A DNA stretch of 64,000 nt from Ostrea edulis (lineage: Eukaryota): the NCBI RefSeq assembly GCF_947568905.1, contig NC_079171.1, forward strand, positions 8,680,001 through 8,744,000, read 5' to 3'. Shown piece after piece: positions 8,096 through 59,799 of this stretch; position 1 is the stretch's first letter, and each line of letters begins with the position of its first letter. Made by a program: the position numbers and the translations under genes. The notes under the pieces were generated by a model. That model searched no databases. It saw nothing but the letters and a program-made list of their open reading frames with translations, and was not told where the DNA came from.

Positions 8096-9007
8096 ATTAA
8101 AATTGGTAACATATACGTTTTACATTTGCAACAATATACAAAATACTTTGAATAATAAGTAATCAAACCAAAAAATGAAATGGTCAACATTTCATTTTTT
8201 GAGATAAACAGCAACTGTTGTTTTTTTTTTTATCAACAACATTTACTGTCAAAAAATCCCTAAACTATAAACTTATATTCGATTCATAATAATGCATTGA
8301 CGTTGGAAAACTAAAACATTAATCGTGATATATTTTCCATATATGTATGCATGCAAAAAAACAACAACAACTGAATTAATGGCCTTGTGGGTTTATTTTA
8401 ACTCAGGCAAATCAAATAGTTTCAAATGGTTTAAAACGTAACGGGCCTACCACAATACTATACCAACCATTCGACATTGAATATGTTTAACGATTTTCTG
8501 CTTCAATACAATACGCAGATTTAAATGGCCAAGTCAGTCGTTGAATGTACGAGTCAGTCCTCCTCGCAAAACTTCAATAATTACTGTTGAGGCCTGGGTA
8601 TTTAAATTATATCTACATTCGCCACCGTTTACTATTAGAAAGCGCCGATATTTCGAAACCTGCATGTTGATCAAACGTTAATATTTCTGATCTCAGAAGA
8701 AGAACACCTTAACTGTCACTCACGTATCGATAGATTGAAGCAGAGACTCTTTTTATTTCATTTACTCTTGCCTCACATAGGCTTCCATGTTCATGACACT
8801 ATACTTTCTATTAAGGGTCTACGCCACAGTCTTGTCCCGTGACCCGTGGTACAGTGTGAATGAAAGTTTTCTCCCATAATCTCTTTCCACAGGAAGGACA
8901 GTGAAATTATTAGTTTGGTATGTGCTTGACAATAGTTCATTTATAGACATTACGGTGTGTTCCATTTGTTTTCGAAAATTTAGACGCCGATTCGCCGGAT
9001 TTGAAAT

Positions 9008-9019
9008 GAAAACGAAAGT
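9008..9019 (+). promoter_or_regulatory. ISRE/IRF-binding element upstream of TRIM copy 1
   Basis: GAAAACGAAAGT fits GAAANNGAAA; ends 20 nt before the ATG; same position in all paralogs. Confidence 0.6.
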
Positions 9020-9038
9020 TGATTTGTCATTTATAAAG

Positions 9039-10913
9039 ATGGCAACATCCCTAGACAGTTCTTCGATGGAGGATGTTACATTGTGTTCTATATGTTTCGA
9101 AAAGTTCAAGTCGCCGAGGTTTTTACCGTGTACACATTCCTTCTGTCACGGTTGTTTATCTTCCTACATTGTTAATGTGTGTAAATCTACAGAGTTTCGT
9201 TTGGGATTTAATTGTCCATTATGCCGCGAGTACATACCCTGTCCTGGTGCATTCGATACGCCAGATGCGTGGGCGGGGCTATTTCCGTTGAATGAAGTTT
9301 TAGAGACAATCGTTAAGAAACCTGATGGGAAATTGTGTGATGCCTGTTTACGAGAAAACGAAAGTGAAAATGCTATCGGGTTTTGCTTGTCTTGTACTGA
9401 ATATTTATGCAAGGTGTGTACCAAATATCACAAAAGGCAATTGCTCTCAAGAGATCATACCATATGTCAACTGAACGAGATGAAATCTGGCAACATATTT
9501 CCCGAATCAGGGAATATCCATAGCTGCCCAAAACATAAAAGGGAAACTGTCAAATTCTTCTGTAATGATCACCAGCAGTCCTGTTGTTCAGTGTGTATAG
9601 GAACAAGTCACAGAAAATGCGAAAGTATTGATACTGTTGAAGATGCAGCAAAAAATATAAAACAAAATCGCCAACTGGATGTTCTTTTAGGTGATATGAA
9701 GAACGTGGAAAAGAAACTGACAAAAGCAAAGAGCGAACAAGAGATAAATGTAGCAGAAATAGAGAATTCAGTGGACAAAATCATAGAGAAAACAGAAAGG
9801 GAATTCAAGGAACTTGTTGATCACCTAGACATACTGAAGAACAAACATTTAGATGAGGTAGCAGATGCGCTGAAGAAAGGAAGGGGGAAGTTAAGTGAAT
9901 GTACAAATGTACTTACTGATGGTATACAGTGTACAAATTACTGCTGCCGGAATATTGAAAGAGTTAAAGAGACGGAGAATGACGCTGAAATGGTGATGAC
10001 GTATTACAGAGTGAAAGAGAGGCTCTTACAGCTGAAACGGTTTAAATGCACGAAGAAACAGATAACGATATCTGAAAAAAAGTCACAAGTTTTGAAAGAA
10101 ATGAGAAATATGGAATCTTTTGGAGATGTTGAATATGCTGAGTCTGATCGTCGCATCACGTACGATGTAAATGACATTGCGTTATCTTTAGTTAATGAAT
10201 TCAGCATTGATGGAGAAAATCCAATTGTGTGGACTGGGAATTTTCTGTCCAATGGTAACTTTGTATTTGCAGATTACATACCTGATGGACGTTGTTTTAT
10301 TTATAACAAAGACTGGAGATTCACGGAAGTCATTAATAGACTGAGTTACCCTTTTGAAGCAATACAAGCTGGAGAAGAATTACTGGTGACGTGTGATGGA
10401 ACGAAGTCTATAGAAGTTTTTTCTTTGTCTGATTTACATAAACTGCGAAGTATCAAAATCAACGACACAATGTATGGAATAACACAACACAATGGAATTT
10501 GTTATGTAGCATGTGGAAATAAGATTATAAAATTCAATCTGTCTGGTGAAAAACTTAGAGAATATAAAGTCGAAGGCAATTACAATATTCACATAAGTAC
10601 AACAAAAGATGGATATATTGTGTACAGTAACTGTTCCCTGAATACAGTAACTGCCATCACGGACCAGGGAGACACCGTGTGGCAGTATAAACATATCAAA
10701 ATGAAAGTACCCCGTGGACTTGATGTAGACTCTTTCGGTAATATCTTTGTTGCCGCTAGAGGAAGTGACAATATCAACGTGTTGTCTGGCGCTGGCAGTC
10801 TCATTAGGATTATCGAGGATATTCCACAGCCAATGTGTATTAAACTAATGGAGGAGAGGAGTGTGTGTTGTGTGTGTAGCAATCGCAGAATCATGAAAGT
10901 GTATAAACTGTAG
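9039..10913 (+). CDS. TRIM E3 ubiquitin ligase, copy 1 (RING-B1-B2-CC-NHL-like propeller), 624 aa, intronless CDS
   Basis: C3HC4 RING (CSIC...CTHSFCHGC...CPLC), B-box1 (CDAC...CLSC...C...H), B-box2 (CPKH...C.DH...C..C....H), coiled coil, C-terminal PRGLDVDSFGNIFVA repeat. ATG 9039 (aagATGG context) matches the start of all paralogs; the track's 8901 start is a GTG. Confidence 0.93.
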   Translation: MATSLDSSSMEDVTLCSICFEKFKSPRFLPCTHSFCHGCLSSYIVNVCKSTEFRLGFNCPLCREYIPCPGAFDTPDAWAGLFPLNEVLETIVKKPDGKLCDACLRENESENAIGFCLSCTEYLCKVCTKYHKRQLLSRDHTICQLNEMKSGNIFPESGNIHSCPKHKRETVKFFCNDHQQSCCSVCIGTSHRKCESIDTVEDAAKNIKQNRQLDVLLGDMKNVEKKLTKAKSEQEINVAEIENSVDKIIEKTEREFKELVDHLDILKNKHLDEVADALKKGRGKLSECTNVLTDGIQCTNYCCRNIERVKETENDAEMVMTYYRVKERLLQLKRFKCTKKQITISEKKSQVLKEMRNMESFGDVEYAESDRRITYDVNDIALSLVNEFSIDGENPIVWTGNFLSNGNFVFADYIPDGRCFIYNKDWRFTEVINRLSYPFEAIQAGEELLVTCDGTKSIEVFSLSDLHKLRSIKINDTMYGITQHNGICYVACGNKIIKFNLSGEKLREYKVEGNYNIHISTTKDGYIVYSNCSLNTVTAITDQGDTVWQYKHIKMKVPRGLDVDSFGNIFVAARGSDNINVLSGAGSLIRIIEDIPQPMCIKLMEERSVCCVCSNRRIMKVYKL

Positions 10914-11778
10914 ATTTTGTTAATTTTGTCGTAATAAAATATTCAGAAAAAAATCAACATTAATGTTTATATGAAAATTGTCTTATCCATATACATTGCT
11001 AGTATTACCTCCATTCTAGGAAACTTTGTCATCTCACAAGAATACTAATGAGTATCAGCTGTAATTTGTTCTGCCTTAAATTACAGGCACATTACACCGT
11101 TTTTCAGATAAAAGTAAAGGTTAGCCTAAAATTCTTGATAAGGAATGGAAAATTCCAACTTAACTTTCAACTACCGTGGGTGGTATGGAGAAGTGACGGT
11201 GGAATTTTGAAACTTAAAACTCATAAACTAAAATTGCCTAAATAAATTTGCCGAAACTCCAATTTCTTAAAGGGGTGGAACTCATCCGTTTAATTCATAA
11301 CTTTTACACTTTTATTTTTCTCTTTCACTACTGCTATCCAAATAATGGTAGAGACGACAGTAGGCACCCAATTATGATACATCTTTATTTACATATGTAG
11401 GGTATCAAAGATTTTGGATTTGTTTTAGCATAAACAATATTTGGTCTGGTCTATCTAATTGTCCAATTAGTTCTGTTATTGAAGTTAATGTGAAGATTTG
11501 CTCCTGTGTCAATGCTTTAAACTATGGATACAATGCTAGATATATGGGATCTCACATGATTCGTGATTTGATGCGACTTATATTCAACGAGTTGTGTGTT
11601 TTCTCTCCCTGAGACACAAACCATGAGATATTCTTTTTATCACATGTCAACCCCTAAGGCTATTCATTTATGTTGCTGTATTGTTGAGAATTTTACTTTC
11701 TGACATGTAAAACTGACGTTTATTTGTGACGTCGCAAACGGTGTTGGAAATGATAGGTTGCATGTATGTAGTGATATA

Positions 11779-11995
11779 TGCAAGGTGAAGACAACGAACA
11801 GTGATCAGTTCTTTAGAATTTTTTAGAATCCACATTTCATTAACACAACTTCTGGCATATGTAGTCGCACAGTAAGTTTGAAGTTTCTCCTTCACAGCTG
11901 TTAACATTTTCGTGAGGAGCAAAGATAGGGGCTTGGTAGAGCACTTACTGGATCCAGCAATGTATTGAACACAGGAGTAAACATCTGATAAATGT
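11779..11995 (-). mobile_element. Internally deleted PLE (RT N-terminal piece joined to 3' terminus)
   Basis: Minus strand encodes YIAGSSKCSTKPLS...KLQTYCATTYARSCVNEMWILKNSKEL, overlapping the 5' end of the 49-50 kb RT, then jumps to the terminal gatcactgttcgttgtcttcaccttgca. Confidence 0.75.
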
Positions 11996-14461
11996 CGTGG
12001 ACAACATACTGACGGGAATGGACTGATGTGTGATGATAATTTGAATATTTCTTCATGTGGGACAGAACATGTTGACATTTTCCATTCTACATAATATTCT
12101 AAATCATTACAGTTTGTCATTCTTTCTGTTTTCATGTCCTAGGAATACTTTAATGTTGCATGTATTACATTTTCACGGATAACCGTGCTAGAATGGGATA
12201 AATGATCAAATCACAGAAACAAATTACATATTTATTTGGTATACAACTAAAATTTAAGTTTCTGGTCCCGGTTTATGGCGTTGAGCCTAAACTTCCTCAA
12301 AGGCGTCTGGCTTAAACTCAGATCCACTATGCTTATGACTGCTGTCATACGTAGACACAACAAATATATCGATCCTCCCCATTGTTTGGTTTTCATACTG
12401 TTGTACTTGGTACACATTGATTTGGTACACACTAAAAGATAGTACCTACGGCAATAAAGTCATATAAACGTACACATACACACAGGTGTTCAGGTTGAAA
12501 CCTTACTTTACATTATCCATGGATAAATCCCACCATACACCGCTATACATATCAGTTACTTCATATTATAACAAGATACACAAAACTCTAGCAATTCTAT
12601 GCATATGAGTTACTCAATACGTTTCTTACAGCGAAACAATTATGGCCAGTACTAACGCCGTAACTTTACAAACAGGACTATGTAGCGAACACGTTTATGA
12701 AAAAGAAAACCGATATTGAAACAATCACAAAACACATAACTAAATAAAGATAGTTGGAAGCTTTAGGACCTTTTTAACAAAAAAAAAATACTATATAAAG
12801 ATCATTACATAAAAGTCACCTCAAAACAAGCTGAAAACGGGCAACATTTACAGCAAAGTGTCTGCAGTAGTTAATTTGTAATTGCTGTCACAACATTCTG
12901 TTGAAAGTGTGATAAGATGAATGCGTCCATCTTGCATGACAGCTCGATTCCTACTGAGAGCACGGACTGGCGGTTTTATGCTCCAATAGATTGGGATTTA
13001 ATAAAGGGGTATTTACAATTTAAAAGAAGCCCCAAGCAGGATAAAACTACGTTTTGTTTGACAAGACAAAACTGAACTAAAATTGAACATATAAATAAAA
13101 TTGAAAGTGACATACATCATGTCAATGTTTGTGTGTAAACTATTGACAGTTTTATGTACAAAGTGAGAAAACTCAAGAGAAAATGTTATGGAACTGCCTC
13201 GTAGTCCCAGACAGGATAAAACATTAAATTCATATACTATACTATATGATAGTCTGTATGTTCGGATTTTGCAATGGTAATATTTTTCTGTTTGAAACAA
13301 GGTTTATATCTCAATCACTGTCTGATAGGCATGAAACGAAGAAGTCGTCAGTGCTATTTCACACATATATTCTTTATTTGTATTGTGTATTGTTGATGTA
13401 GTACTGTTTTTGTTGTGTGAAAGCTACGTAGGGATCTTAACATGGAACGGAAGTGAATAGATACGAAAGGGCAAATATACCAATTGATTATAATTGTAAA
13501 AATTACTGGTCGATTATTCGTTCATTTAAATAGCGTTCATTTATCAATGATGAAGCATGTAAAACTCTAGTAAACTCGCTAGTTACATCCAGATTAGATT
13601 ACGGAAATGCATTGATCTATGATGTTCATTCTCAACACACCAGCACATTTCAGAGGGCACAAAACACAGGTGCAATATTAATAACACGCTCAAAAATAAT
13701 TCGACCATATTACTCCTGTTCCAATAGATCTTCAGTGGCTCCCAGTTGAATACAGAATTCAATGTAAGATACTTCTTCATACTTTCAAATTTCTCAACAC
13801 CCTATCTCCAGTTTACATAAAGAATATCCTGTAGTTTACAATCCCACAAAATCACTAAGATCCGAATCTCTGCATCTTCCCGAGGTACCTCGGACACGTA
13901 CGAAAACATATGGGAATTGACGTTTAGACAAGGCTGCATCGAGTCTCTCGAACTCACTGTTTTTTAAACTCAGACAATGTCTTTCACTGTCTAGTTTTAA
14001 AGTGGACCCCAAAACGCATTTATTTTATATTAGCTTTTAATTTGTGATTATTTTTATATACTTAGTGCCCTCACATACAAAAAAAACCTTGTCGTTTGTT
14101 ATTACACCTATGTACTTTCTATGTATTTAATTATTACTATGGCTTGTTTTAAATTGTTTCATATGTTATTAGGGTGATCATATCATTACATTGGGTGCTA
14201 TATATTAATATAATAATTATGCATTTTAATTCTGACACTAAGGATATTTTATTCACATGAATGTGCAAATCGATTTTATATTATCTTTTCTTTCACATTT
14301 GTAAAGAGAACTAATGTTGATAGGGCGCTATATAAATCGTTTCATTACAATTACAATTAACATGCAACGGAAGTGAATAGATGCGAAAGAGCGAATATGC
14401 CAATTTATTATAAATGTAAATATTACCGGTCGATTCTAAGTCTTAAAAAATAAATATATTG

Positions 14462-15130
14462 TCTTAATGGCTATTTTAATGTATCTATGTCAACACGTGT
14501 GATGCTGGATCTTATTGGTTATTTTAGTGTATGTATATCAACACGTGTAATGTTGGTTCTTATTGGTTATTTTAGTGTATCTATATCAACACGTGTGGTG
14601 CTGGATCTTATTGGTTATTTTAGTTTATCTATATCAACACATGTGATGCTGGATCTTATTGGTTATTTTAGTGTATCTATATCAACACGTGATGCTGGAT
14701 CTTATTGGTTATTTTAGTGTATATATATCAACACGTGTAATGCTGGTTCTTATTGGTTATTTTAGTGTATCTATATCAACACGTGTGGTGCTGGATCTTA
14801 TTGATTATTTTAGTTTATCTATATCAACACATGTGATGCTGGATCTTATTGGTTATTTTAGTGTATATATATCAACACGTGTAATGCTGGTTCTTATTGG
14901 TTATTTTAGTGTATCTATATCAACACGTGTTGTGCTGGATCTTATTGGTTATTTTAGTTTATCTATATCAACACACGTGATGCTGGATCTTATTGTTTAT
15001 TTTAGTGTATCTATATCAACACGTGTAATGCTGGTTCTTATTGGTTATTTTAGTGTATATATATCAACACCTGTGATGCTGGATCTTATTGGTTATTTTA
15101 GTGTATCTATATCAACACGTGTGATGCTGG
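14462..15130 (+). repeat. 48-bp minisatellite, about 14 units, with a 3-unit higher-order pattern
   Basis: Unit tatcaacacgtgtgatgctggatcttattggttattttagtgtatcta; three variant units recur in the same order three times. Confidence 0.95.
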
Positions 15131-15182
15131 TTTCATTAATTTGGATAGTAACGACAAAATAATAATCAATAATAACAATGTT

Positions 15183-15330
15183 AGACCGGTCGACAGGGGA
15201 TGCTTACTTCTCCTAGGCACATGATCCCACCTCTGGTTTATCCAGGAGTTCGTGCTTGTCCTACTCTCCATTTTGTATTTCTTATAGGAATTATGAGATT
15301 GATCACAGTTCGTTATCTTCCCTTTTCCAT
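15183..15330 (+). mobile_element. PLE 3' fragment (paralogous copy at 31403-31552)
   Basis: accggtcgacagggatgcttact...cacctctgg...gagattgatcacagttcgttatcttc. Confidence 0.8.
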
Positions 15331-15901
15331 GTGTCACTTTGAGGAGGACATTTTTATTGGGATTAGTTTGTGACATGTGATCTGTTTCTCGGTAATAGAC
15401 TAGAAGATTTATTTATCTGGACAAACTTACCTGGACCTAAGGCGTCTGCATTTATGAAGGTTGAGTTGTATGTTTGACGAGTGGTCAAAACACAAAAAAG
15501 GTTGCCACAAGGCTAGGGCTGACTAGGAGGGACATACGCAAGGTCACACATTTTCCAAATCTCTGAAAAATAAAATGGATTCAAAACAGATATATTGAAC
15601 TTACTTTGATTTGGTAACAAGTCGTGGCCAAATTTAACGTTTGTGTCAAGATACATAATCAAATATTGAAATGAAATAGCCAAAATTCAGAAAGATTGCA
15701 ATTTTCAAGTTTAAACCAATGCCAGTAGGAAATATTAAACAATTGTCATAAAGAATATGGTAATCAGAAAACTACATTCCCTTGATATGAAATGACTGAC
15801 ATTTGAAATGAATTTATCAAAATATATTCATGAAAAGTGCATAACATTAGCAACAATTTGATTAATTTAGTCAATTCTATCAATTTTGATTGGATTTGAT
15901 A

Positions 15902-16490
15902 TTTTTAGCTCATCTGAGGTCAAGGGTTATGTGAGCTTTTCTGATCAAAACTTCTCGTCTGCTATCGTAAACTTTTTCACATTTTCATCTTCTTTCAAAC
16001 CACCTTGCCAATTTCAACCAAACTTCACACACAAAAAATCCTTGGGTCAAGAGGATTCATGTTTATAGAAATGAGGGGCAATATAGTGAAGATGCACTTA
16101 ACAAATTTTCTTCTCCAGAACTAGTGAGCCAATTTCAATCAAACTTGGTACAAATCATCCTTTTGTGAAAGGAGCTATATTATGTTCAAATGAATGGTCA
16201 TGACCCTTTCCAAATGGAGGTAACAAAACAAATGTGATGGGGTTCATTTAAAAATCTTCTCAAAAGGCACAGGGTCAGACAAGTTCAAATTTACAGAACG
16301 GTTTCCTGACATAGTGCAGATTCAAGTGTGTTAAAATCATAACCTCCTCTGGAGTTAGGGTGAGGCCATAACAAGGGGTCAAACTTTTGACATGCAGATG
16401 TGTAGGTAAAATCTTTTATAAATCTTCTCCAGAACATGGGAGCTCCAGGAGATAGTGTAGATTTAAGTTTGTTAAAATCATGACACCGGA
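15902..16490 (+). mobile_element. Helentron-associated (HINE/DINE-like) non-autonomous element, partial; paralog at about 32174-32630
   Basis: Starts tttttagctcatctgag...gtgagcttttctgatc, a 5' structure I recognise from bivalve HINE-like repeats; 3' end not resolved. Confidence 0.55.
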
Positions 16491-16643
16491 GCTAAATAAA
16501 CCATAAACCTCTTCTTTCCTCTGGTATGAGTGAAATCTACAAAATAATAGCAACATTTCTCAAATTTGGTCATTTCAATTTCCTGTTATATGTATTTGTC
16601 TGATAGATATTTTTGGTAACTTGACAAATTAAAGGAGGGGGAC

Positions 16644-17150: not shown

Positions 17151-18100
17151 TTTGTTTTACTTTTCCGATGGTGAAATCATGCTTTATACAAAATGCTTAT
17201 ACGAGGCATTGGATGATATATTAGTTTAATGAACCACTTAATTTTTTTTCTAAATCTTACATGTAGGTATACAGTGGTGAACTTAAGGTGTCCCCCTCCT
17301 TAATTTTTCAAATTTAAGGGTCTCTTGTTTATAAAAAATGTAAACGATAAAAGAAGCAATAATTTCTTCCACTCTCGGCGAAATAAATGACAAAATCTTT
17401 TGATTTATTGAATTACTTTTATTGGGAGAACGTACATTTTTTCCCCAAAACCCTTACAATTTGCGTATTTGTTTTTAACTTCACCTCATTTAAAATGACA
17501 GAAAATAGTTCAAATGACTAGATAAGAGATATATTTCAAGTGCTAAAAAATCTGTAAATTCCAAGAGCTCACGGGGGCTTCGCACCGTGGGTCTCCACCA
17601 ACGTGGCCAACAGACCTCCTGCCTCGTTGACTTGCGCCTCCATAAATGCAATTCCTGGATCCGCCCTTGGTATATACATTTTTAGGAAGTTCCGAAATTT
17701 TAAAAACTGCGTTTGCGTCTAAATTTAGTATTTCTAATCTTGGAATACCAATACATGAACTGTCATCAGTGTACCACTATATATTAAATTAGCCTGTATA
17801 TCGAATTTAAACCTTAGCCTTCTAAAATTAAATTAGGCCTACTTATGTCCCACATAGCTTTCCATCTTTCTGAATACTCTACCTACATGTACGTCACTTT
17901 TGTTCCGTTTCTGGAGACATTTTCTGCACGTCGATGTTGCGGACAGTTTAGACTCTAGATCTACAAGGACGGTGAAATGTGTGCCTTTTGTGCTTGTTGA
18001 CAAGGATAATATCGACAATCGATATTTCATCAACACAAATTCCATTTGTTTCGGAAAATTCAGAACACCGAGGTTACAACGGGTTCACCGAATTTGACAT

Positions 18101-18112
18101 GAAACCGAAAGT
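18101..18112 (+). promoter_or_regulatory. ISRE/IRF-E upstream of TRIM copy 2
   Basis: GAAACCGAAAGT is a perfect match to the IRF-E consensus G(A)AAA(G/C)(T/C)GAAA(G/C)(T/C); 20 nt before the ATG. Confidence 0.65.
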
Positions 18113-18131
18113 TGATTTGTAATTTATAAAG

Positions 18132-21082: not shown

Positions 21083-21085
<3 letters not shown>

Positions 21086-21143: not shown

Positions 21144-21144
<1 letters not shown>

Positions 21145-22768: not shown

Positions 22769-22771
<3 letters not shown>

Positions 22772-32955: not shown

Positions 32956-33902
32956 TAATTAAGAGTTTGTTTTACTTTTACGATGGTGAAATCATGCTTT
33001 ATACAAAATGCTTATACGAGGCATTAGATGAAACACTTTTTCTATAGTCTTACATGTATGTATACAGTGGTAGACTTAAGGCGCCCCCCCCCCCCTCCTT
33101 AAATTTTCAAATTTAAGGATATCTTGTTTATAAAAAAAAAATGTAAACGATAAAAGAAGCAATAATTTCTTCCAGTCTCGGCGAAATAAATGAAAAAATC
33201 TTTTGATTTATTGAATTACTTTTATTTGGAGAACGTACTTTTTTTTTTCAAAACCCTTAAAATTTGCGTCATTTTCTTTTAATTTAATCTCATTTAAAAT
33301 GACAGAAAATAGTTCAAATGACTAGATAAGAGATAATTTTGAGCGTTAAAAAATCTGTAAATTCCAAGAGCTCCTGGGGGCTTCACACCCTGGGTCCACC
33401 AGACCCCCTGCCTCATTAACTTGCGCCTCTATAACTGCAATTCCTGGATCCGCCCTTGGTATGTACATTTTTAGGAAGTTCCGACATTCTGAAAACTGCG
33501 TTTGCGTCTAAATTTAGCATTTCTAATCTTGGAATACCATATACAACTGTCATCAGCGTATCACTGTATTAAATTAGCCTGTATATAAATCGAATTTAAA
33601 CCTTACCCCCCCCCCCCTTAAAATCAGATTAGGCCTACTTATGTTCCGCATAGCTTTCCATCTTTCTGACTACTCTGCCTACGTCACAGTTTTGTCTCAT
33701 TTCTGGAGACAGTTTATGCACGTCGTTGTTGCGGACAGTTTAGACTATAGATCTACAAGGACGGTGAAATGTGTGCCTTTTGTGCTTGTTGGCAATGGCA
33801 ATGTCGACAATCGACACTTCATCAACAGACATCACACTGTGTTCCAATTGTTTCGGAAAATTCAGAACACCGAGGTTACAACGGGTTCGCCGAATTTGAA
33901 AT

Positions 33903-33914
33903 GAAACCGAAAGT
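33903..33914 (+). promoter_or_regulatory. ISRE/IRF-E upstream of TRIM copy 3
   Basis: GAAACCGAAAGT, 20 nt before the ATG. Confidence 0.65.
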
Positions 33915-33933
33915 TGATTTGTAATTCATAAAG

Positions 33934-35808
33934 ATGGCAACATCACTAGACAGCTCTTCGATGGAGGATGTTACATTGTGTTCTATATGTTTCGAAAAGT
34001 TCAAGTCGCCGAGGTTTTTACCGTGTACACATTCCTTCTGTCACGGATGTTTATCTTCCTACATTGTTAATGTGTGTAAATCTACGGAGCCTCGTTTGGG
34101 ATTTAATTGTCCATTATGCCGCGAGTACACACCCTGTCCTGGAGCCTTCGATAAGTCAGACGAGTGGGCGGAGCTATTTCCTGTGAATGAAGTTTTAGAG
34201 ACAATCATTAAGAAACCTGATGGGGAATTATGTGATGCCTGTTTACGAGAAAACGAAAGTGAAAACGCTATCGGGTTTTGCTTGTCTTGTACTGAATATT
34301 TATGTAAGATGTGTACCAAATATCACAAAAGGCAATTACTCTCAAGAGACCATACCATATGTCAATTAAACGAGATGAAATCAGAGAACATATTTCCTGA
34401 ATCAGGAAATATCCACGGTTGCCCTGAGCATAAAAAGGAAACAATAAAATTCTTCTGTAACGAACACCAGCAGTCCTGTTGTTCAGTGTGTATAGGAACA
34501 AAGCACAGAAAATGCGAAAGTGTTGATACTGTCGAAGATGCGGCCAAAAATATAAAAGAAAATGGCCAACTGGATGTACTTCTGGGTGATGTGAAGAACC
34601 TGGAAAAGAAACTGACAAAAGCAAAGAGCGAACAAGAAAAAAATGTAGCAGAAATAGAGAATTCAGTGGACGAAATCATAGAGAAAACAGAAAGGGAATT
34701 CAAAGAACTTGTTGATCACCTAGAAATACTGAAGAACAAACATTTAGATGAAGTAGCAGGTGCCCTGAAGAAAGGTAGGAGGAAGTTAAGTGATTGTGCA
34801 AATGTACTTACTGATGGTAAACAGTGTACAAATTACTGCTGTCGGAATATTGAAAGAGTTAAAGAGACGGAGAATGACGCTGAGATGGTAACTACTTATT
34901 ACAGAGTGAAAGAGAGGCTCTTACAGCTTAAACGGTTTAAATTCACGAAGATAAACATAACGATATCTGAAATGACGTCACAAGTTTTGAAAGAAGTGAG
35001 AAATATGGAATCTTTTGGTGATATTGAATATATTGAGTCTGATCGTCACATCACGTACGATGTACATGACATTGCGTTATCTTTAGTTTCTGAATTCAAT
35101 ATTGCTGGAGGAAATCCGAATGTGTGGACTGGGAATTTTCTGTCAAATGGTAACTTTGTAGTTGCAGACCACAGCAGTAGTGGCTGTTGTTTTATTTATA
35201 ACAAAGACTGGAAATCCACGGAAGTCATTGATGGACTGAGTTACCCTTTTCAAGCAATACAAGCTGGAGAAGAATTACTGGTGACGTGTCATTTAGCGAA
35301 GTCTATAGAAGTTTTTTCTGCGTCTGATTTACATAAACTGCGAAGCATCAATATAAACGAAACAGTGTATGGAATAACAAAACACAATGGAGCGTGTTAT
35401 GTAGCATGTGGAAGTAAAATTATAAAAATTGATATGTCCGGTAAAAACCTTCGAGAATATAAAGTTGAAGGCAATAATAATGTTAACATAAGTGGAACAA
35501 ATGATGGACATCTTGTGTACAGTAACTGGTTCCTTAATACAGTAACCGCCATCACGGACCAGGGAGACACCATCTGGCAGTATAAGCATCTCAAAATGAA
35601 ACAACCCCGTGGACTTGATGTAGACTCTGTCGGTAATATCTTTGTTGCCGCTGAACAAAGTAACAATATCCATGTGTTGTCTGGTGCTGGTACACTCCTT
35701 AGGATTATCGAGGATATTCCACAGCCAGTGTTTATTAAACTAATGCAGGATAGGAGTATGTGTTGTGTGTGTAGCAATCGCAAAATAATGAAAGTGTATA
35801 AACTGTAG
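33934..35808 (+). CDS. TRIM E3 ubiquitin ligase, copy 3, 624 aa, intact and intronless
   Basis: Same domain order as copy 1; uninterrupted ORF; AATAAA at 35828-35833. Confidence 0.93.
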   Translation: MATSLDSSSMEDVTLCSICFEKFKSPRFLPCTHSFCHGCLSSYIVNVCKSTEPRLGFNCPLCREYTPCPGAFDKSDEWAELFPVNEVLETIIKKPDGELCDACLRENESENAIGFCLSCTEYLCKMCTKYHKRQLLSRDHTICQLNEMKSENIFPESGNIHGCPEHKKETIKFFCNEHQQSCCSVCIGTKHRKCESVDTVEDAAKNIKENGQLDVLLGDVKNLEKKLTKAKSEQEKNVAEIENSVDEIIEKTEREFKELVDHLEILKNKHLDEVAGALKKGRRKLSDCANVLTDGKQCTNYCCRNIERVKETENDAEMVTTYYRVKERLLQLKRFKFTKINITISEMTSQVLKEVRNMESFGDIEYIESDRHITYDVHDIALSLVSEFNIAGGNPNVWTGNFLSNGNFVVADHSSSGCCFIYNKDWKSTEVIDGLSYPFQAIQAGEELLVTCHLAKSIEVFSASDLHKLRSININETVYGITKHNGACYVACGSKIIKIDMSGKNLREYKVEGNNNVNISGTNDGHLVYSNWFLNTVTAITDQGDTIWQYKHLKMKQPRGLDVDSVGNIFVAAEQSNNIHVLSGAGTLLRIIEDIPQPVFIKLMQDRSMCCVCSNRKIMKVYKL

Positions 35809-51261: not shown

Positions 51262-51520
51262 AACTGTAGAATAGGTCCTCAGTAACCCTTGCTTGTCGTG
51301 AGAGGCGACTAAATGGTGCGGTCCTTCGGATGAGACCGCAAAAACCGAGGTCACGCGTCACAACAGGCGTGGCACGATAAATAGCCCTTCCTGCTCAAAG
51401 GCCGTAAGCGCCGAGCATAGGCCTAAATGTTGCAGCCCTTCATCAGCAGTGGTGACGTCTCCATATGAGTTAAAGATTCTCGAGAGGGACTTTAAACAAT
51501 ATTTAATCAATCAATCAATC
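51262..51520 (+). mobile_element. SINE (probably MetaSINE-related), 5'-truncated
   Basis: cttgcttgtcgtgagaggcgactaaa central domain, shared 3' part, (aatc)n tail; family assignment is from memory. Confidence 0.7.
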
Positions 51521-52308
51521 TAATTGGTCTTGCTATTTAAATCAATATGAATATTTGCTCCTGGGTTAATGTTAGAAATGTAAGAATTTGTTTTCGTGCA
51601 ATAAGGGAGCTCCACCTTAATGCAATTTTGTACACCCACATTCTGTCTTTAAAATGAAGGAATTTGTCATTTCGTTCTCCGGTTGGAGATGAGTTCTTAT
51701 TCAGCCAAACACTTATCTAATCTATGTGTGCCTGTTATTTACATATATGTTTCTCCTTAACCACAGGGCCACAGTCAGATAATTTTATAAACTTAAAGCA
51801 TTTAGGCACGGATCTAGTAAAAATCAATTTCAGGAAGCGAACTCCTCCATCTAAACAAAAATTATAATTGAAATTGAATGGTCTGCGAATAAATCTAGTG
51901 TTTCTAATTTTGGAATATCAATACATTAATTAACTGTCACCCATGTATCGTCGTGTTAAATTATTCTTTATATAAATACAAACCAAACCTTAACCAGCAC
52001 CCCGCCCCAAAAAAGGATTAGGTATATTTATGTCCCACATAGCTTTCCATGTCTCTGAATACTCTGCCTACGTCACAGTTTTGTCCCGTTTCTGAAGACA
52101 TTTTCAGTGTGTGTTTTCTGCACGTCGGTGTTGCGGACATTGTATTCTCTATATCTACACGGACAGTGAAATTTATGATTTATGTGCTTTTTGGCATGAC
52201 AACGTCGACCATCGACTCTTCATTTACAGATGCAAACATAATGTGTTCCATTTGTTTCGAAAAAGAAGTTGAACGTCCAGGTTACGACAAATTCGCCAAA
52301 TTTGAAAT

Positions 52309-52320
52309 GAAAGCGAAAGT
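52309..52320 (+). promoter_or_regulatory. ISRE/IRF-E upstream of TRIM copy 4
   Basis: GAAAGCGAAAGT, 20 nt before the ATG. Confidence 0.65.
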
Positions 52321-52339
52321 TGGTTTGTAATTTATAAAG

Positions 52340-54208
52340 ATGGCAACATCACTAGACAGTTCTTCGATGGAGGATGTTGCATTGTGTTCTATATGTTTCG
52401 AAAAGTTCAAGTCGCCGAGGTTTTTACCGTGTACACATTCCTTCTGTCACGGTTGTTTATCTTCCTACATCGTGAGCTTGTGTAAATCTACGGAGACTCG
52501 TTTGGGATTTAATTGTCCATTATGCCGTGAGTATACGCCCAGTCCTGGCGCCTTCGATAAGCCACACGAGTGGGCGGGGCTTTTTCCTGTGAATGAAATG
52601 TTGAGGAAAATTGTAGACAAATCAGACCAATTGCTTTGTGAGCCATGCTTGAGAGAAAAAGAAGAAGAGGAGGCCTCGGACTACTGCTTTTCATGTTTAG
52701 AACATTTATGCAAAATATGTACGAAATGCCACAGGAAGAATATGTCGTCACGAGACCACAAAGTATCTCCACTAAATGAACTGAAATCGGCGAACAGAAC
52801 ATCCATTGTTGATATCTCAAACAGCTGTGCCACCCATAAGGATGAAAAGATTAGGTTATATTGCTTTGATCACGAACAGCCCTGTTGCGCAATGTGTGGT
52901 GGCATGGAGCATAGGAGATGTGAGCAGTTTGACACTATTGAAAATGCTGTACATGTTTTTAAGGAAAGTGGCAAGGTTGACTCCATTATGGATGATGTAA
53001 ACAAATTTAAAAGTAAATTAGAAAAGGCCAAAGACGAAGAAGAGAAGAATATAACGGAAATCGAAAATTCGGTTGATGAAATGATAGCAAGATCGGAAGA
53101 GGATTTTAAAACTCTTCTTGACCACTTACAGAAATTGCAACATGAACATATAGAAGAAATATCCAGTTCTCTGAAGAAAAGCAAGGAAAAATTGCAAACA
53201 TGCATAGGCACCTTAACGGATGGAATACAATGTGCAGAGTATTGCAGCAAAATGTTTGAACAAGCCCGAATCAGTGAATATGAAACGGAGTTCATAATGA
53301 AGTTTCATACGTCGAAAATAACGTATGAACATTTAAAACACGTGAATTTTTCACGAAAGCGCATCATGATTTCTGCAAAAAAGGATCCTATTTTGACGGA
53401 AATCTTGAATATGACAGCTCTCTCTGACGTTCACCATACCGAATCCTCTCGTCAACTTTATTTTGATGTTCGAACTGTAGAAATGTCTTTAATAAAGGAA
53501 TTTAGCATTGATGGGGATGTCGTGTGCGATGGTATATTTCTGTCTAATGGCACTTTTGTGATAGCGGATTACAGAGATGATGGGAAATGCATGTTTTTGG
53601 ACAAACATTGGGTCCCCAGTATATTTGGTTAAAGTCTTAAGAAACCATTTGGTTTGATAGAAAACGATGAAGAAGTTCTTGTGACTTGCAGCGGCTCAAA
53701 AAGTATTGAAGTATTTTCTTCATCAGATTTACAGAAACTTCGAAGTATTCCCATGACTGAATCAGTTTTTGGAATAACAAACCGGAGGGGTGACATATAT
53801 GTTGCGTGTGGAAAGAAAATCATTAAAATCGATAGCGTGGGTAGGATATTGAAAATATACGATGTAGAAGGGGCAAATAATGTAAATATACTTGCAACAA
53901 GCACTGGACTTATTGTGTACAGTGATTGGAAAATAGAAAAAGTGACAGCGATAACCGATCAGGGAGACATTGTCTGGAAGTATAAAAATCGTAACCTGAA
54001 ATGTCCATGTGGAATCGATCAAGACTCTGTCGGTAACATATACGTTACAGGAACAGATAGCAATAACGTCCACGTGTTGTCTGGAACCGGGGAACTTATT
54101 AGGGTGTTCGAAGACATCCCGAGCCCGACATTCTTTAAATTAAATGAAGAGAGGGGCATTATATGTGCTTTTGATATATCAAAACGCATAAGAGTGTTTG
54201 AAGTTTAA
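52340..54208 (+). pseudogene. TRIM copy 4 (divergent), in-frame TAA at 53630-53632; pseudogene or assembly error
   Basis: ORFs 52340-53632 and 53654-54208 are in the same frame (1869 nt total) and align collinearly with the paralogs across the stop. Confidence 0.85.
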
Positions 54209-54249
54209 GTTTCCCAGGAACATGACATTACATTGATTCTGAACAACAG

Positions 54250-54317
54250 TCCTATTGTATATTGTATTCCTTATAGGAGTTATGAGATTGATCGCTGTTT
54301 GTTATCTTCACCTTTCC
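54250..54317 (+). mobile_element. PLE 3' terminal fragment
   Basis: ttgtattccttataggagttatgagattgatcgctgtttgttatcttcacctttc. Confidence 0.75.
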
Positions 54318-55696
54318 TATAAAATGTTAGCTGCGCTAATGCAGCCCTCTCCGATTATTTCTTTCTTTCTTTTTGAGGGGGCTACAACTCCTTAGGATCT
54401 CCGTAATGGTGCAAATGCGAGAGTGATTCACTCCCGCAACATTTTCGATCATTTTAAACATTTGCTGACTTCCATTACGTAATTGAAATGCTATTCTCTA
54501 TTTCTTAGTCAATATATGAATTTACAACCTGCAACTTTTCGATGTATTCCAATTTCTTGATTCATATTTGTGTGCCATCTTTGATGTACTGAAGTTTCAA
54601 CTTCCAGTTGTCAAATTATTTGCATATGCCATATAAGGTAGTGTTTACATCAATGGACGAGCACGGAGGTGAAAGCGATTTCGTCGGTATTAAAATATCA
54701 AGTTAAAAAGCAACAGCAGAGTGTACGTTTCTCGGCCACCACATGATTTGTCCTTTTTTGTCGGAATGACTCAAGTAACTACATTTTCGCGCTGATTGTC
54801 AATGTTGAGGTTTTTCAGTAGATTTACTGACGAGATCTCACGATAATAAGCATGGCATAGCAAACCAAGAATCTTGAATGTTGTAAATATATTTAATTAA
54901 AAACACCTTTCTCAAACAATAATCAATCAATCATTCAAACATGCCCAAGCACAAAGTCGGTAGTATTTATTGTGTAAACAACAGCATTTGATACAAATAC
55001 AAGGATTTTATTAAAGGTTATTCATTAAAAAAATATTGGCATCATTACGAAGATCCCGTGGACTTCTAGCCCTATCCTGAAAACGTCTGAATAAAAAAGG
55101 AGAGGATTAGATTATTGCAGAATATAAAATGTCAAACAATCTATTTAAAACATTCGTTGCTCATCAAAAACACTCAGGACATAGCGAATCAAAGTTGATA
55201 TTGATAGAAATAAAACATGTGAAATTGATATTAATCTTTTTTCCCGATTTAACCTTTTCAGAATGATTATCAGGCCCTTCCCTAACCTGTAAAATATGTA
55301 ATTAAAGTGAATAAAGTATCTCTTGACTGTGTGTCAATTAACATTCAAGTGTTATTTTATGAAATTAGTCGTCACTATTTCTTGGTATTTATTTTTCGCC
55401 GAGATATTGACATTTCGTAGTTAGCCATTTACGAAATTTGTCCCTGCATTATGTTTATGCCCGGACTAAGAATGCAAGTTTTATCACTCGTGTATATACT
55501 TAGTTTTGCTCAGTCGGAAATATACGATAGAACAATCATATAGACGAAAAGTGACACTGCTTGCTGTGAAAAATACCATCAAGCCCATGACTCTTGTCCG
55601 TTCGTACCGTGTTAGAGTTGAAATATCACATCAGAACAAAACGCACGCCATACAAGTGCAAATCAGATGTTCGTTATCTCCATTTGTTCATTCTTT

Positions 55697-55747
55697 TTAA
55701 TTAACAACTACAATTAATTAACAACTACAATTAATTAACAACTACAA
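55697..55747 (+). repeat. 17-bp tandem repeat x3
   Basis: ttaattaacaactacaa x3. Confidence 0.9.
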
Positions 55748-55875
55748 TACTACAGAGAATCAAAGTTTCATATTTGTTCTTTATATCCAACATTTGAACA
55801 TATAGAAAAAAATACTATTCTAATGTTCTGCATAAACTTCACTGTTATCACAACACTGAGAGAGGAGCGCTGGGA

Positions 55876-57770
55876 TTATTTGAATTCGTACACTTTGATG
55901 TGTTTTCGATTGCTACACACGCAACATGTATTTCTCGCTTTGTTTATTTTCATAAAGTATGGTCTCGGAATGTCCTCAAAAAGTCGAATTAATTTGCCTT
56001 CACTGGACAACACATGGACATTGTCACTGGATTTACCAGCGACATAGATATTACCATCAGAGTCCGTGTCAAGGCCACACAGAAATTTAAGATGTGGACT
56101 GTCGCATTTCCACACGGTTTGACCTCCGTCTGTTACGACGTGTGTTTTTCTGTTACTGTATATTATGTGTTTTTTCGTGGCGACGATGTGCTTCACGCCA
56201 GTCTCTGCGCTGTACTCTTTCATTATTCTTTCATACTCGTTTATCTTCACGATTTTGTCATTGCATGCATAGTAAAAGTAAGCATCCTTCTTTGCTATTC
56301 CAAAGTTTTTGTGAAGACTGGTGAATATCATATTTGATGATTTGGAATAAGAGTAAAGTGATACCCTTTCAATGGATCTTGAACCGTGGCATGCCACTAA
56401 TAATTCTCGTGCCTTTTCACACAGACCGAAAGGTTCTGAAGACAAGTCAATGGATCTTGTGCACGCAAACACTTTGTTATAAAAGAAGCATTTACCATTG
56501 TTGCTCCTTTTACAACCCCGCCTTTTTGTCGACAGCCATGATAGAACGAACTCTCCATTTGATAAAAACGTACCATCACATACGCAGCCTGCATCAATGC
56601 TAAAATGATTTAATAAAGATAACTCAACTCTTCTCAGATCAGACTTGACATCAAATAGGGACTCTGAAAATACTGCACCAGGAAAACTTTCAAGATCCAT
56701 GATATCTTCCAAAATAGGATCCTTTCCTTCCTTAAGCCCTATGCGTATTTGTGTAAATTCGTAATTTTTGAGTTGTTCAAATATTTTTCTGCTTTTATAG
56801 TACTTCACAACCATATCGATGTCATCCTGACTTTTTCTACAATCCTCAATATTTCTGTAACAGTAATCTGTGCATTGAATTCCATCTGATAGCGTGTCTA
56901 TGCATTTTTCGTATTTTTCTTTATTTCTCTTTACAGCGGTAGCCATTTTTGTTAGATACTCATTTTTCAGATGCTGCAAGTGATCGATAGCAACCCGAAA
57001 TTCTCTCGTGGTATTCTCTGTAATCTGGTCTGCTTTATCATCCATTCTGTAACGAACCTTTCTTGTTCCTTCTTTGCATCTACTAATTTGTTTTCAAGAA
57101 TATGTATGTCTTCAGACAGGCTGTCGAAATTATGACTAAGAATCTCTCTGAGAGTCTCAGCAGTTTTCTTTATAGCATCAACACTTTCACATTTTCTGTG
57201 TTCCGTACTGACACACATTGCACAGCATGGCTCTTCGTGATCGTTGCAAAATAGCTCTAGTTTTCTATCCTGATGTGTTGAACACATATTTTCTCTACCA
57301 ATTCTCGGTGTAATATTCATTCCTTTCATTTTATTCACTGGTACTGTCTTATGGTCAAGTGTTGTTAGACTTCTTTTATGATATTTTGTACACAATTTGC
57401 ACAAATATTCCATGCAAAAGAAACAAAAATCGGTTGCATACTCTACTTCGCTCTGTCGTAAGCAAGTCTCGCATTGTGTTTGTTCTGATTCCTGTAAAAG
57501 TTTTCCTAATACTTCGTTTTCAGGGAAAAGTTCTGCCCACTTCTCTGGCTCACCCAAGGCATTATCAATGGGAATGTACTCACGGCATAATGGACAATTA
57601 AATCCCAAACGAGGCTCCGTAGATTTACACACATTATCAATGTAGGAAGATAAACACTTGTGACAGAAGGAATGTGTACACGGTAAAAACCTCGGCGACT
57701 TGAACTTTTCGATACATATCGAACAAAATGTAACATCCTCCGTTGTAGAGCTGTCTAGTGAAGTTGCCAT
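55876..57770 (-). pseudogene. TRIM copy 5 (most divergent, inverted), 1-nt frameshift at about 57045; pseudogene or assembly error
   Basis: ORFs 57770-56967 and 57045-55876. GAATGG would need to be GAA ATG G to give EQERFVTEMDDKADQI, which aligns with EQEINVAEIENSVDKI; 1895+1 nt is divisible by 3. Confidence 0.85.
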
Positions 57771-57787
57771 TTTTCTATCACAATTCA

Positions 57788-57799
57788 ACTTTCGCTTTC
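57788..57799 (-). promoter_or_regulatory. ISRE/IRF-E upstream of TRIM copy 5
   Basis: Minus-strand GAAAGCGAAAGT, 18 nt before the ATG at 57770. Confidence 0.65.
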
Positions 57800-59799
57800 A
57801 GTACGAATTCAGCGTACCCGTTTTAGCCTCGGCGTTATAAATTTTCCGAAACAAATGGAACACCCTGTGATGTCTGTAAATGAAATATCGATTGTAGACG
57901 TTGTCATTGCTGACAAGAAAATAAACCATAAATTCACTGCCCTTGTATATTAAGAGTCTAATGCACCGTCCTTCCCATGAGAATCATTGGACAAAACGTG
58001 CATTCACACTGATAAAAGTGCAACGAGTTATAAAACAAGTCTGTTACGTAGATCTCTGCCCGGAAGTATAGTATTCGGGAACATGGAAGCCTATGTCGGA
58101 CATAAGTAATTTAGATAGGAGATTAAAGGTTTAAATTCAATGTGACAATTAATCTCTTGATATTCCAGGATTTAAAAAAAGTCTAAATTTAGACGCACAT
58201 GCAGTCTTAAAAATTCCGGAGCTATCTATTATCATATACTTTATATTCCACACAATATAATGATACGCAAGACGCAATCTAATACACAATTACCGAGCTG
58301 CCCAAGAGTTATTTCCCTTTTTGACCTCTTACGGACGGTGAGGCGCAAAATGTTTTTGTACTCACGCGGTGGGTACAAATGCTGATCGTTGTGTTCATAT
58401 ATTGTCTAAAGGGTGATTATCAGGCGTCATGCAGCAACCCGAACTGCTGGAACACACACATTTAGTAAGTTTATGAGTATTTGATAATAAAATAGCTCAA
58501 ACAAAAATTGATAATCACCATCTTTCTTTGATAAAAGTATCACTTACATAGCAGAGGAAATAAACAATAAGTTCATATTTAATGCAATGGCGTAATTCAA
58601 ACAAAATATTCTTGATATTGTCAGTATAATGTATACCAACGGTTGATAAAAAGAAAAGAAGTAGGTACAGTTTCTACTGTCATCTGGTCCAGGAAATAGA
58701 TGAATTCAGCAGGGGTCCCAAAATCTGACATTCAAATAAGGAATATATAAGCAAATCAAAACTACGTTTAATTTGATCCGAAATTACTTTGTGTTGTATG
58801 AGAGGAGCGTGAAGTTGGCATAAAATTGCCAAAAATGCCAAAATGAATGAAAAATTTCATAAATTCAGGGTGTTTTCCCTTCAGAAAACATACAGCCCAT
58901 GTGTCGAGCAAATTCATATTCAAATACATTTTTCGCCTTCTCTTAATACACAATATATATTAATTGCATTTTGCTCGACGGATGGGGACACCTTTTCCTA
59001 AGCAATAATCTGGATCAAATTTAACAGTTATCAAACTCTTTTTGAAAAATGGCGGGAAAAACTCTTATTCATGACGTAATAATGCTATAAAATTAGAAAT
59101 AACTTCGATTTAAGTTGAGATTGTGTACTTGGCATGTATTTAACTTATTCAAAACACAGATCAAGCTTGATTCAAGACACATTTAAATCAAGAGAAATTT
59201 TTTGGGCCTTTTTATGTACACAATTGTACCTTGTTCTTTACGCTTTCATCCTTATTTAGATAGCCAGTCTATACTGTATTTATACATCTTGTACCCACCA
59301 AAGCGTTCAACAGAATACAGAACGTACCGCCATCACAAAAGAGCTGATATCTCGGAAGTTGCGTATCAAGATCAGGTCTTCTCTAACCGTTACACTGGAG
59401 ACAGATCTGACAGCATTGCATTTGAGGTCGTGTTATTGACCACCGTCTCATGAATAATTCAATAAAGATTCGACCAATAACAATAACTTGACAAATAATG
59501 AAGGACTAATCAGGAATCGTTTTACTGAAGTGTACACAAAAATTGGCATCGATCCATGAAGTGTTCAAACGAACTCCAAATATCAGCGTTAAAGGAAGAA
59601 CAAATGACGATCGTATATATTATACATCCATTATCGTTAAATATATTTTCTGTGGTATTCTAACATCGATCATGGCCGCCACCACCTTCTTCGATTATTA
59701 TCCCGTGTTTCTCGGTAATTATCGACATGCGCATGATAAATACCAAGTATGTTCCGATATAACAGGAAACTTTCACGTTGACGAGAGCCTTCATTTGAT

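What the first reader, a model, noticed from the sequence alone, without database searches (positions are those of the whole stretch)
8928..57907. A fossil RING start sits just upstream of every TRIM gene, and is an ATG-to-stop uORF in three copies
Seen: about 140 nt before the main ATG each paralog carries a degenerate duplicate of its own N-terminus. Copy 3 (33795-33899): MAMSTIDTSSTDITLCSNCFGKFRTPRLQRVRRI*. Copy 5 (57907-57809, minus): MTTSTIDISFTDITGCSICFGKFITPRLKRVR*. Copy 4 (52196-52330): MTTSTIDSSFTDANIMCSICFEK...*. Compare the main ORF MATSLDSSSMEDVTLCSICFEKFKSPRF. Copy 2 has lost the ATG; copy 1 keeps DNSSFIDITVCSICFRKF in frame with the CDS with no stop. Inference: the family ancestor gained a new RING start by duplication or insertion, and the old start became promoter/5' UTR sequence that now abuts the ISRE. 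It may act as a translational-control uORF or CxxC micropeptide.
Basis: partly seen in the sequence, partly recalled or inferred. Interest (0 to 1): 0.7.

Follow-up and report, generated by a model that had tools for sequence, protein, structure and literature searches.

The report
Decaying duplicate start before oyster TRIM genes
Every gene of a 35-copy flat-oyster TRIM ubiquitin-ligase array carries, about 140 bases before its start codon, a worn copy of the first 28 codons of a TRIM gene; it is real and arose once, but it drifts like junk DNA, so it is a fossil and not a conserved regulatory mini-gene.

Summary
All five copies in the window carry the relic at the stated coordinates. So do all 33 genes and 2 gene stumps of one roughly 470-kb tandem array on a single Ostrea edulis chromosome.

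The relic is absent from 27 other TRIM paralogs of the same genome. It is also absent from four loci of Crassostrea gigas and Saccostrea cucullata relatives. It therefore arose once, in the founder of this array.

It shows no sign of selection:
- The ancestral upstream ATG survives in 18 of 33 copies and was lost by at least four different mutations.
- The reading frame is broken in at least three different ways.
- There is no codon-position pattern.
- In recent duplicate pairs it changes as fast as non-coding flank and third codon positions (0.045 against 0.041, 0.041 and 0.031). The adjacent ISRE-like leader (0.019) and RING codon positions 1+2 (0.010) are constrained.

A conserved uORF or CxxC micropeptide is not supported.

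The transcription start could not be mapped. The only possibly-RNA run was uninformative, so an incidental uORF effect in individual copies stays open.

The working start keeps a leader motif found in its nearest paralogs, so the relic looks like the added copy.

The scan had already noted the ISRE in neighbouring windows of this array. It had not noted the relic.

The parts
8929..8985 (+). Relic, copy 1 (57 nt left). The ATG region was lost by a 22-nt deletion and there is a 13-nt deletion at the 3' end. It is in frame with the CDS without a stop.
18003..18078 (+). Relic, copy 2. ATG changed to AGG, and a 13-nt deletion removes the first Cys codon.
33795..33899 (+). Relic, copy 3. Homology to the N-terminus spans 33795-33880. 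The ATG-to-TGA ORF of 34 codons runs to 33899.
52196..52330 (+). Relic, copy 4. Homology spans 52196-52286. The 44-codon ORF is frame-shifted after CSICFEK and reads through the ISRE mini-ORF.
57809..57907 (-). Relic, copy 5. Homology spans 57907-57822, and the ORF is 32 codons.
33881..33933 (+). Leader between the relic and the main ATG in copy 3. It holds the motif CGGGTTCG, the ISRE-like core at 33895-33914, and a 7-codon mini-ORF at 33901-33924. The equivalent ISRE cores are at about 9000-9019, 18093-18112, 52301-52320 and 57807-57788(-).
33934..35808 (+). Main intronless TRIM gene, copy 3 (624 aa, with RING, B-boxes and a C-terminal propeller-like region). The other main ATGs are at 9039 (intact), 18132 (broken), 52340 (broken) and 57770 minus strand (broken).

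Best explanation
The relic is a neutral fossil of a single small duplication. An approximately 84-nt copy of the first 28 codons of a TRIM gene (ATG through Pro-Arg-Phe) came to lie about 55 nt upstream of the working start codon. It sits just 5' of the gene's proximal leader, which holds the CGGG[A/T]TCG motif and the ISRE-like site. This happened in the founder gene of an Ostrea edulis tandem array. Array amplification, together with recombination among copies, then spread the relic to all roughly 35 members. Since then it has decayed without constraint on its ATG, its frame or its peptide. The ATG-to-stop ORFs in some copies are what remains of an originally open frame, not a maintained uORF.

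Shown: single origin, neutral rate, and scattered disablement. Inferred: the mechanism and polarity of the duplication. Unknown: whether the relic lies in the mRNA.
For: - **Real similarity.** Relic against own CDS gives z of about 4-10.
- **Distribution.** It is present in 33 genes and 2 stumps, all in one array. It scores at chance level in 27 other O. edulis TRIM paralogs (the one high score, L087, is an unrelated tandem repeat). It also scores at chance in 3 C. gigas and 1 Saccostrea locus. A second Saccostrea locus, L048, was in that test too but was scored from a start set one base off.
- **ATG loss.** The uATG column is kept in 18/33 copies. It was lost by ATT, AGG, a 15-nt deletion and a 22-nt deletion.
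- **Frame and Cys pair.** ORF lengths are 15, 32, 34 and 44 codons. The Cys pair is lost in seven copies by a frameshift, and in L004 by a 13-nt deletion.
- **No codon periodicity.** Pairwise divergence by codon position is 0.22, 0.31 and 0.24. In the real N-terminus it is 0.033, 0.032 and 0.108.
- **Neutral rate.** In eleven recent sister pairs the relic differs at 37/824 sites (0.045). Upstream flank gives 0.041, RING third positions 0.041 and CDS third positions 0.031. The spacer plus ISRE gives 0.019 (Fisher p=0.007) and RING positions 1+2 give 0.010 (p=2e-7).
- **No link to gene integrity.** Among the 17 copies with an intact main ORF, all relic states occur.
- **Window copies.** Two of the three window copies with a closed relic ORF (copies 4 and 5) have a broken main gene.
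Against: - Across all pairs the relic (0.25) is less diverged than far-upstream DNA (0.36-0.48) or CDS third positions (0.33-0.36). I attribute this to a shallower, recombining genealogy of the whole 5' module. RING third positions are only 0.11-0.15, and sister pairs by CDS are not sisters upstream. Weak constraint on parts of the relic is not excluded. The windows around the uATG and around GCCGAGGTTAC are its best-kept parts.
- Sixteen of 33 copies still have an ORF of 29 or more codons that starts at some ATG and crosses the relic.
- The transcription start is unmapped.
Confidence: 0.8

Rival explanations
1. Functional translational-control uORF. The transcript starts upstream of the relic. 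In copies that keep it, the uATG (G at -3) captures scanning ribosomes and damps or conditions translation of the TRIM protein.
For: - Closed ORFs of 32-44 codons end 10-35 nt before the main ATG in copies 3, 4 and 5 and their relatives.
- Conserved non-coding blocks lie upstream of the relic: GGACAGTGAAAT at about -180 (p=0.13) and a TACGTCA-containing block at about -255. The promoter may therefore extend beyond the relic.
Against: - The uATG was lost in 15/33 copies by at least four independent mutations.
- ORF length and frame are not conserved.
- The substitution rate is neutral.
- ATG triplets in -170..-1 are not depleted: 3.61 observed, 3.48 expected, 3.55 for CAT.
- Intact genes show every relic state.
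- No transcript evidence was obtained.
Confidence: 0.1
2. CxxC micropeptide. The relic ORF is translated into a small zinc-binding or RING-mimicking peptide with its own function.
For: A C-x-x-C pair is kept in the ORFs of copies 3, 4 and 5.
Against: - Codon position 2 is the most variable position (0.31).
- The Cys pair is lost by a frameshift in seven copies, deleted in L004, and altered in others (CYFC, RYFC, CSIS).
- The peptide stops at residue 27 of a RING that needs about 45 residues, so only the first Cys pair is present.
Confidence: 0.02
3. Alternative first coding exon. The relic ends in GAG|GT and could splice to the equivalent AG|G in the real N-terminus (139-nt GT..AG interval, in frame), which would give an alternative N-terminus.
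For: In copy 3 the homology ends exactly at CCGAG|GTTAC, and the same CCGAG|GT follows in the CDS. The frame would be preserved.
Against: - The GT is lost or deleted in many copies (GAGGC, GAGCT, GATGT, GAAGT, and a 13-nt deletion in six copies).
- The would-be acceptor has no pyrimidine tract.
- The +3 to +6 donor positions are poor.
- No joints were seen, although the runs laid were contigs and mostly DNA.
Confidence: 0.03
4. Different origin, same fate. The relic is the 5' stump of another, older TRIM paralog. A new copy carrying its own ISRE-bearing leader was joined to that paralog at codon 28 by illegitimate or unequal recombination. In that case the DNA upstream of the relic is the older gene's promoter.
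For: - The relic is as similar to N-termini of other family members (0.61-0.78) as to its own gene's (0.72).
- The region upstream of the relic shows no similarity to the leader (score 20 against 17.4 +/- 3.5). This argues against a simple tandem [leader + N-terminus] unit.
- Conserved blocks exist upstream of the relic.
Against: - No CGGG[A/T]TCG motif or full ISRE lies upstream of the relic.
- The short sequences give no resolving power.
Confidence: 0.25

Closest known systems
Decayed partial gene duplicates (pseudo-exons or 5' gene stumps) in tandem gene arrays
   Same: Significant similarity to a coding segment, disabling indels and start loss, a neutral rate, and inheritance by all array members from one event.
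   Different: It sits only 55 nt from the working start, inside the promoter/leader region. It may therefore incidentally add upstream ATGs to the mRNA.
Conserved-peptide uORFs (CPuORFs) and regulatory uORFs such as those of ATF4/GCN4
   Same: In some copies it is an ATG-to-stop ORF ending shortly before the main ATG.
   Different: The start codon, the frame and the peptide are not conserved among paralogs, and location in the mRNA is unproven.
Oyster IRF/ISRE-type antiviral promoters (IRF signalling and ISRE reporters in C. gigas: PMC5557890, PMC6685332, PMC8218723)
   Same: The adjacent leader holds GAAACCGAAAGT (a GAAANNGAAA-type core) and is kept more strictly than its flanks.
   Different: This concerns the neighbouring element, not the relic. 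Binding and inducibility are untested here.

Membership tests
Regulatory / conserved-peptide uORF | Lies in the 5' leader of the mature mRNA | tested here: inconclusive
   Three runs are DNA. The one possibly-RNA run covers only conserved CDS pieces, the first starting at 33960, and these come from other paralogs.
Regulatory / conserved-peptide uORF | uATG conserved among homologs | tested here: not met
   Kept in 18/33 copies, with at least four independent kinds of loss.
Regulatory / conserved-peptide uORF | Peptide or ORF under purifying selection (third-position excess, frame kept) | tested here: not met
   Divergence by codon position is 0.22/0.31/0.24. Rate is 0.045, equal to the neutral proxies. 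Frameshifts are present.
Regulatory / conserved-peptide uORF | Ribosome occupancy and an effect on main-ORF translation | not testable with these tools
   No Ribo-seq or reporter data are available.
Neutral fossil of a partial duplication | Similarity to a coding segment beyond chance | tested here: met
   z of about 4-10 against shuffles.
Neutral fossil of a partial duplication | Substitution rate equal to unconstrained DNA | tested here: met
   relic 0.045 against 0.041 (flank), 0.041 (RING position 3) and 0.031 (CDS position 3).
Neutral fossil of a partial duplication | Single origin, with a distribution limited to descendants | tested here: met
   35/35 array members carry it. None of 27 other paralogs does, nor do the four validly tested loci of other oyster genera.
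TRIM (RING-B-box-coiled-coil) E3 ligase, for the main gene | RING and B-box domains in order | tested here: met
   Pfam RING families match residues 14-64 and B-box families match 99-141 and 163-193. RefSeq names the proteins 'TRIM45-like'.
TRIM (RING-B-box-coiled-coil) E3 ligase, for the main gene | Coiled coil and C-terminal NHL-type propeller | tested here: inconclusive
   Only sub-threshold propeller-type Pfam hits (Vgb_lyase, Mala_s_1-like). No structure was predicted.

The most novel reading that the evidence does not exclude
The transcript starts upstream of the relic, for example at the conserved GGACAGTGAAAT block. The presence, absence and length of the relic ORF then act as a paralog-specific translational dial. 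Copies with the well-contexted uATG would be strongly repressed and depend on reinitiation, while copies that lost it would be freely translated. Members of an IRF-inducible TRIM array would thus have different protein outputs from similar promoters.
Probability: 0.1. Interest if true: 0.5.

Novelty: new member of a known kind. Interest (0 to 1): 0.25.

Why it matters
Mainly as annotation hygiene and as a dated marker.
- The relic shows that the whole 470-kb array descends from one founder gene.
- It marks the 5' edge of the conserved, homogenised ISRE-to-RING module.
- It explains the spurious upstream ORFs and N-terminal extensions in gene models.

If it turns out to be transcribed, it would be a clean natural series of uORF-present, uORF-absent and uORF-truncated alleles in one gene family. 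There is no sign that selection cares about it.

Tried and rejected
1. **RNA evidence.** One run search and one read laying were allowed. Runs X3, X5 and X6 cover the intergenic DNA and are genomic. X1 may be RNA: CDS depth is 60-130, unique flanks are at 0, and the CDS/repeat depth ratio is far above that of the DNA runs. Its pieces differ from copy 3 at 1-4% of bases. No TSS inference was drawn.
2. **Exact-protein look-ups for transcript contigs.** Copy 3 is not on record. The JGI contigs L036 and L037 start inside the CDS. All C. gigas contigs examined are collinear with genomic DNA, so none is a cDNA.
3. **Metagenome scan** with a conserved 19-mer from the RING. It returned three chance bacterial matches.
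4. **Homology between O. edulis and C. gigas/Saccostrea upstream regions.** This was suggested by eye (TACGTC...CATTTC...ACAG). It was rejected because every pairwise z is below 3 and the alignment is unconvincing.
5. **Simple tandem duplication of [leader + N-terminus].** There is no similarity between the region upstream of the relic and the leader.
6. **TATAAAG at -10..-4 as a TATA box with translation from Met10.** Rejected. The MATS start is conserved in Crassostrea and Saccostrea, and Met10 is absent in five array copies.
7. **L087, an apparent second case (z=21).** It is an unrelated tandem repeat upstream of the true ATG.
8. **Literature.** Nothing was found on this array or on uORFs born from start duplication.
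Full report
**What is there.** The window is Ostrea edulis chromosome-scale contig C8, 8,680,001-8,744,000. It holds five intronless TRIM-type genes with RING, two B-boxes and a C-terminal propeller-like region; RefSeq names them 'TRIM45-like'. The main ATGs are at 9039, 18132, 33934, 52340 and 57770 (minus strand). Only copies 1 and 3 have an intact main ORF.

**Check of the observation.**
- Copy 3 has ATG at 33795 and a TGA ending at 33899, giving 34 codons.
- Copy 4 runs 52196-52330, 44 codons.
- Copy 5 runs 57907-57809 on the minus strand, 32 codons.
- Copy 2 has AGG in place of the ATG.
- Copy 1 has lost the ATG region and reads in frame into the CDS.

Local DNA alignment of each upstream region with its own first 150 coding bases scores 27-38, against 16-17 +/- 2.4 for shuffles. 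Homology runs from the ATG to CCGAGGTT, about 84 nt at about 70% identity, and then stops. The relic ends about 15 nt before the ISRE-like core, which ends 19 nt before the main ATG.

**Extent.** A DNA search of the whole genome with relic + leader + N-terminus gives 35 matches. All lie on C8 between 8.46 and 8.93 Mb. Thirty-three are genes. Two (L034, L035) are stumps that keep the relic and ISRE but have deletions inside the true N-terminus. The alignment shows the relic in every copy.

A protein search with the RING finds the next paralogs at 64% identity or less, on other chromosomes. Twenty-eight such loci were fetched and 27 could be scored (L072 gave no RING ORF). None of the 27 has any upstream similarity to its own N-terminus, with z between -1.3 and 2.3. 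The single outlier, L087, is an unrelated tandem repeat. Three C. gigas loci and one Saccostrea locus also score at chance. A second Saccostrea locus, L048, was in that test but scored from a start set one base off. The relic therefore arose once, in the array founder, after it split from its nearest paralogs.

**Is it under selection?** No sign of it.
- *State tally.* The ancestral uATG column is ATG in 18/33 copies. It is ATT in six, AGG in one, removed by a 15-nt deletion in three, and removed by a 22-nt deletion in six.
- *Frame.* Among copies that keep the ATG, seven are frame-shifted to a 15-codon ORF that lacks the Cys pair. Five are shifted after CSICFEK and run 44 codons through the ISRE. 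Six keep a 32-34-codon ORF.
- *Codon periodicity.* Divergence by codon position in the relic frame is 0.22, 0.31 and 0.24. In the true N-terminus it is 0.033, 0.032 and 0.108.
- *Rate in eleven recent sister pairs.* The relic gives 37/824 = 0.045, upstream flank 0.041, RING third positions 0.041 and CDS third positions 0.031. The leader with the ISRE gives 0.019 (p=0.007 against the relic) and RING positions 1+2 give 0.010 (p=2e-7).
- *Link to gene integrity.* The 17 copies with intact main ORFs include every relic state.
- *ATG depletion.* ATG triplets are not depleted in -170..-1: 3.61 observed per copy, 3.48 expected, 3.55 for the reverse-strand control.

That is what is seen.

**A caveat on rates.** Over all pairs the relic (0.25) is less diverged than far-upstream DNA (0.36-0.48) or third positions in the CDS body (0.33-0.36). 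The whole 5' module has a shallower history. RING third positions are only 0.11-0.15. Pairs that are sisters by CDS can be 0.3-0.45 apart upstream, for example L019/L020 and L001/L005. This indicates recombination or conversion among array members, not constraint on the relic. For that reason the rate test used only pairs that are close in all regions.

**Origin and polarity (inference).**
- The region upstream of the relic shows no similarity to the leader (score 20 against 17.4 +/- 3.5). At the relic's own level of decay such similarity should be visible, so a plain tandem duplication of [leader + N-terminus] is disfavoured.
- The leader next to the working ATG carries CGGGTTCG at about -51. 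The motif CGGG[A/T]TCG occurs 44-89 nt before the ATG in four of the eight nearest paralogs. It occurs nowhere else in the up-to-450-nt upstream regions of the 27 paralogs scored, where about 0.7 occurrences are expected by chance (my own estimate, not a tool result).
- The working start thus keeps the subfamily's leader architecture.
- The relic is no closer to its own gene's N-terminus (0.72) than to those of other family members (0.61-0.78). A stump of another paralog is therefore an open alternative.

**Is it transcribed?** Unresolved. Of the runs offered, X3, X5 and X6 cover intergenic DNA and are genomic. X1 behaves like RNA: CDS depth is 60-130 and unique flanks are at 0. However, its contigs start at 33960, differ from copy 3 at 1-4% of bases, and come from other paralogs. 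The relics of those paralogs would not lay at 95% likeness. No cDNA contig could be found by exact-protein look-up.

Conserved blocks upstream of the relic (around -180 and around -255) allow a TSS upstream of it. The tight ISRE-to-ATG spacing allows a TSS downstream of it. I put this at roughly even odds.

If the relic is transcribed, copies with the uATG (G at -3) would carry a repressive uORF. Because intact paralogs switch this on and off freely, any such effect is incidental.

**Comparison with known things.** It behaves like a decayed partial duplicate (pseudo-exon or stump) in a tandem array. It fails the two testable defining features of a conserved or regulatory uORF. The neighbouring ISRE-like site agrees with earlier notes of this scan on adjacent windows of the same array and with the published oyster IRF/ISRE pathway (PMC5557890, PMC6685332, PMC8218723). 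Here it is about half as variable as neutral DNA.

- The read laying used 5,501 letters.
- A majority consensus was built only for the non-coding upstream region and first codons of this host gene family.

**Verdict.** A real, single-origin sequence fossil, evolving neutrally and of modest interest. The functional uORF and micropeptide readings are unsupported. The only open point is TSS mapping.

Noticed in passing
window 33889-34140 and the equivalent in all array copies (L001-L033): The stretch from the ISRE-like site through the RING (about -50 to +200) is far more alike among paralogs than the rest of the gene, even at third codon positions (0.11-0.15 against 0.33-0.36). Pairs that are sisters by CDS can be 0.3-0.45 apart upstream. 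The array is a recombination or conversion mosaic with a homogenised 5' module whose 5' edge coincides with the end of the relic.
   Followed up: partly
array copies, CDS +201..+1400 (L001-L033): In recent duplicate pairs, codon positions 1+2 change as fast as position 3 (0.029 against 0.031). This means relaxed or diversifying selection on the B-box/coiled-coil/propeller body. Sixteen of the 33 copies have truncated main ORFs.
   Followed up: partly
window 33901-33924; also 9006-9029, 18099-18122 and 52307-52330: The ISRE-like site itself contains a 7-codon ATG-to-TAA mini-ORF (MKPKVDL). An ATG at this place is present in 29/33 copies. In five copies (L028-L031 and L033, including window copy 1) the stop is lost and the mini-ORF becomes an in-frame extension, MKTKVDLSFIK. 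RefSeq model P0005 uses that extension as the protein start.
   Followed up: partly
L052, L053, L056 and L057 (44-89 nt before the ATG); window about 33883-33890: The CpG-containing motif CGGG[A/T]TCG recurs just upstream of the ATG in the four nearest out-of-array TRIM paralogs that have it, and in the array's leader. It decays in several array subgroups. It may be a subfamily promoter or leader element of unknown factor.
   Followed up: partly
L038:830-920, L046:125-225, L060:800-890 (C. gigas relatives): Three C. gigas paralogs share a putative 5'-UTR intron of about 85-95 nt (ACAG|GTA ... YAG|ACAAA) that ends 75-90 nt before the ATG. An inverted ISRE-like site lies downstream of the putative acceptor in two of them (L038 and L060). 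This rests on splice motifs only and has no transcript support.
   Followed up: no
L034:1500-1760 and L035:1470-1740 (C8 8,869,7xx and 8,534,0xx): Two gene stumps keep the relic and the ISRE but have deletions inside the true N-terminus and stops further on. They are dead array members.
   Followed up: yes
protein P0004 (RefSeq model, 569 aa): This gene model joins the C-terminus of one array member to the B-box2 region of the next, skipping the intergenic DNA, relic, RING and B-box1. It is probably an annotation artefact of the repetitive array.
   Followed up: no
window 14659-15162: A 167-codon ORF is made of a degenerate tandem repeat (units like MLDLIGYFSVYISTRV). It looks like a minisatellite and not a gene.
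   Followed up: no
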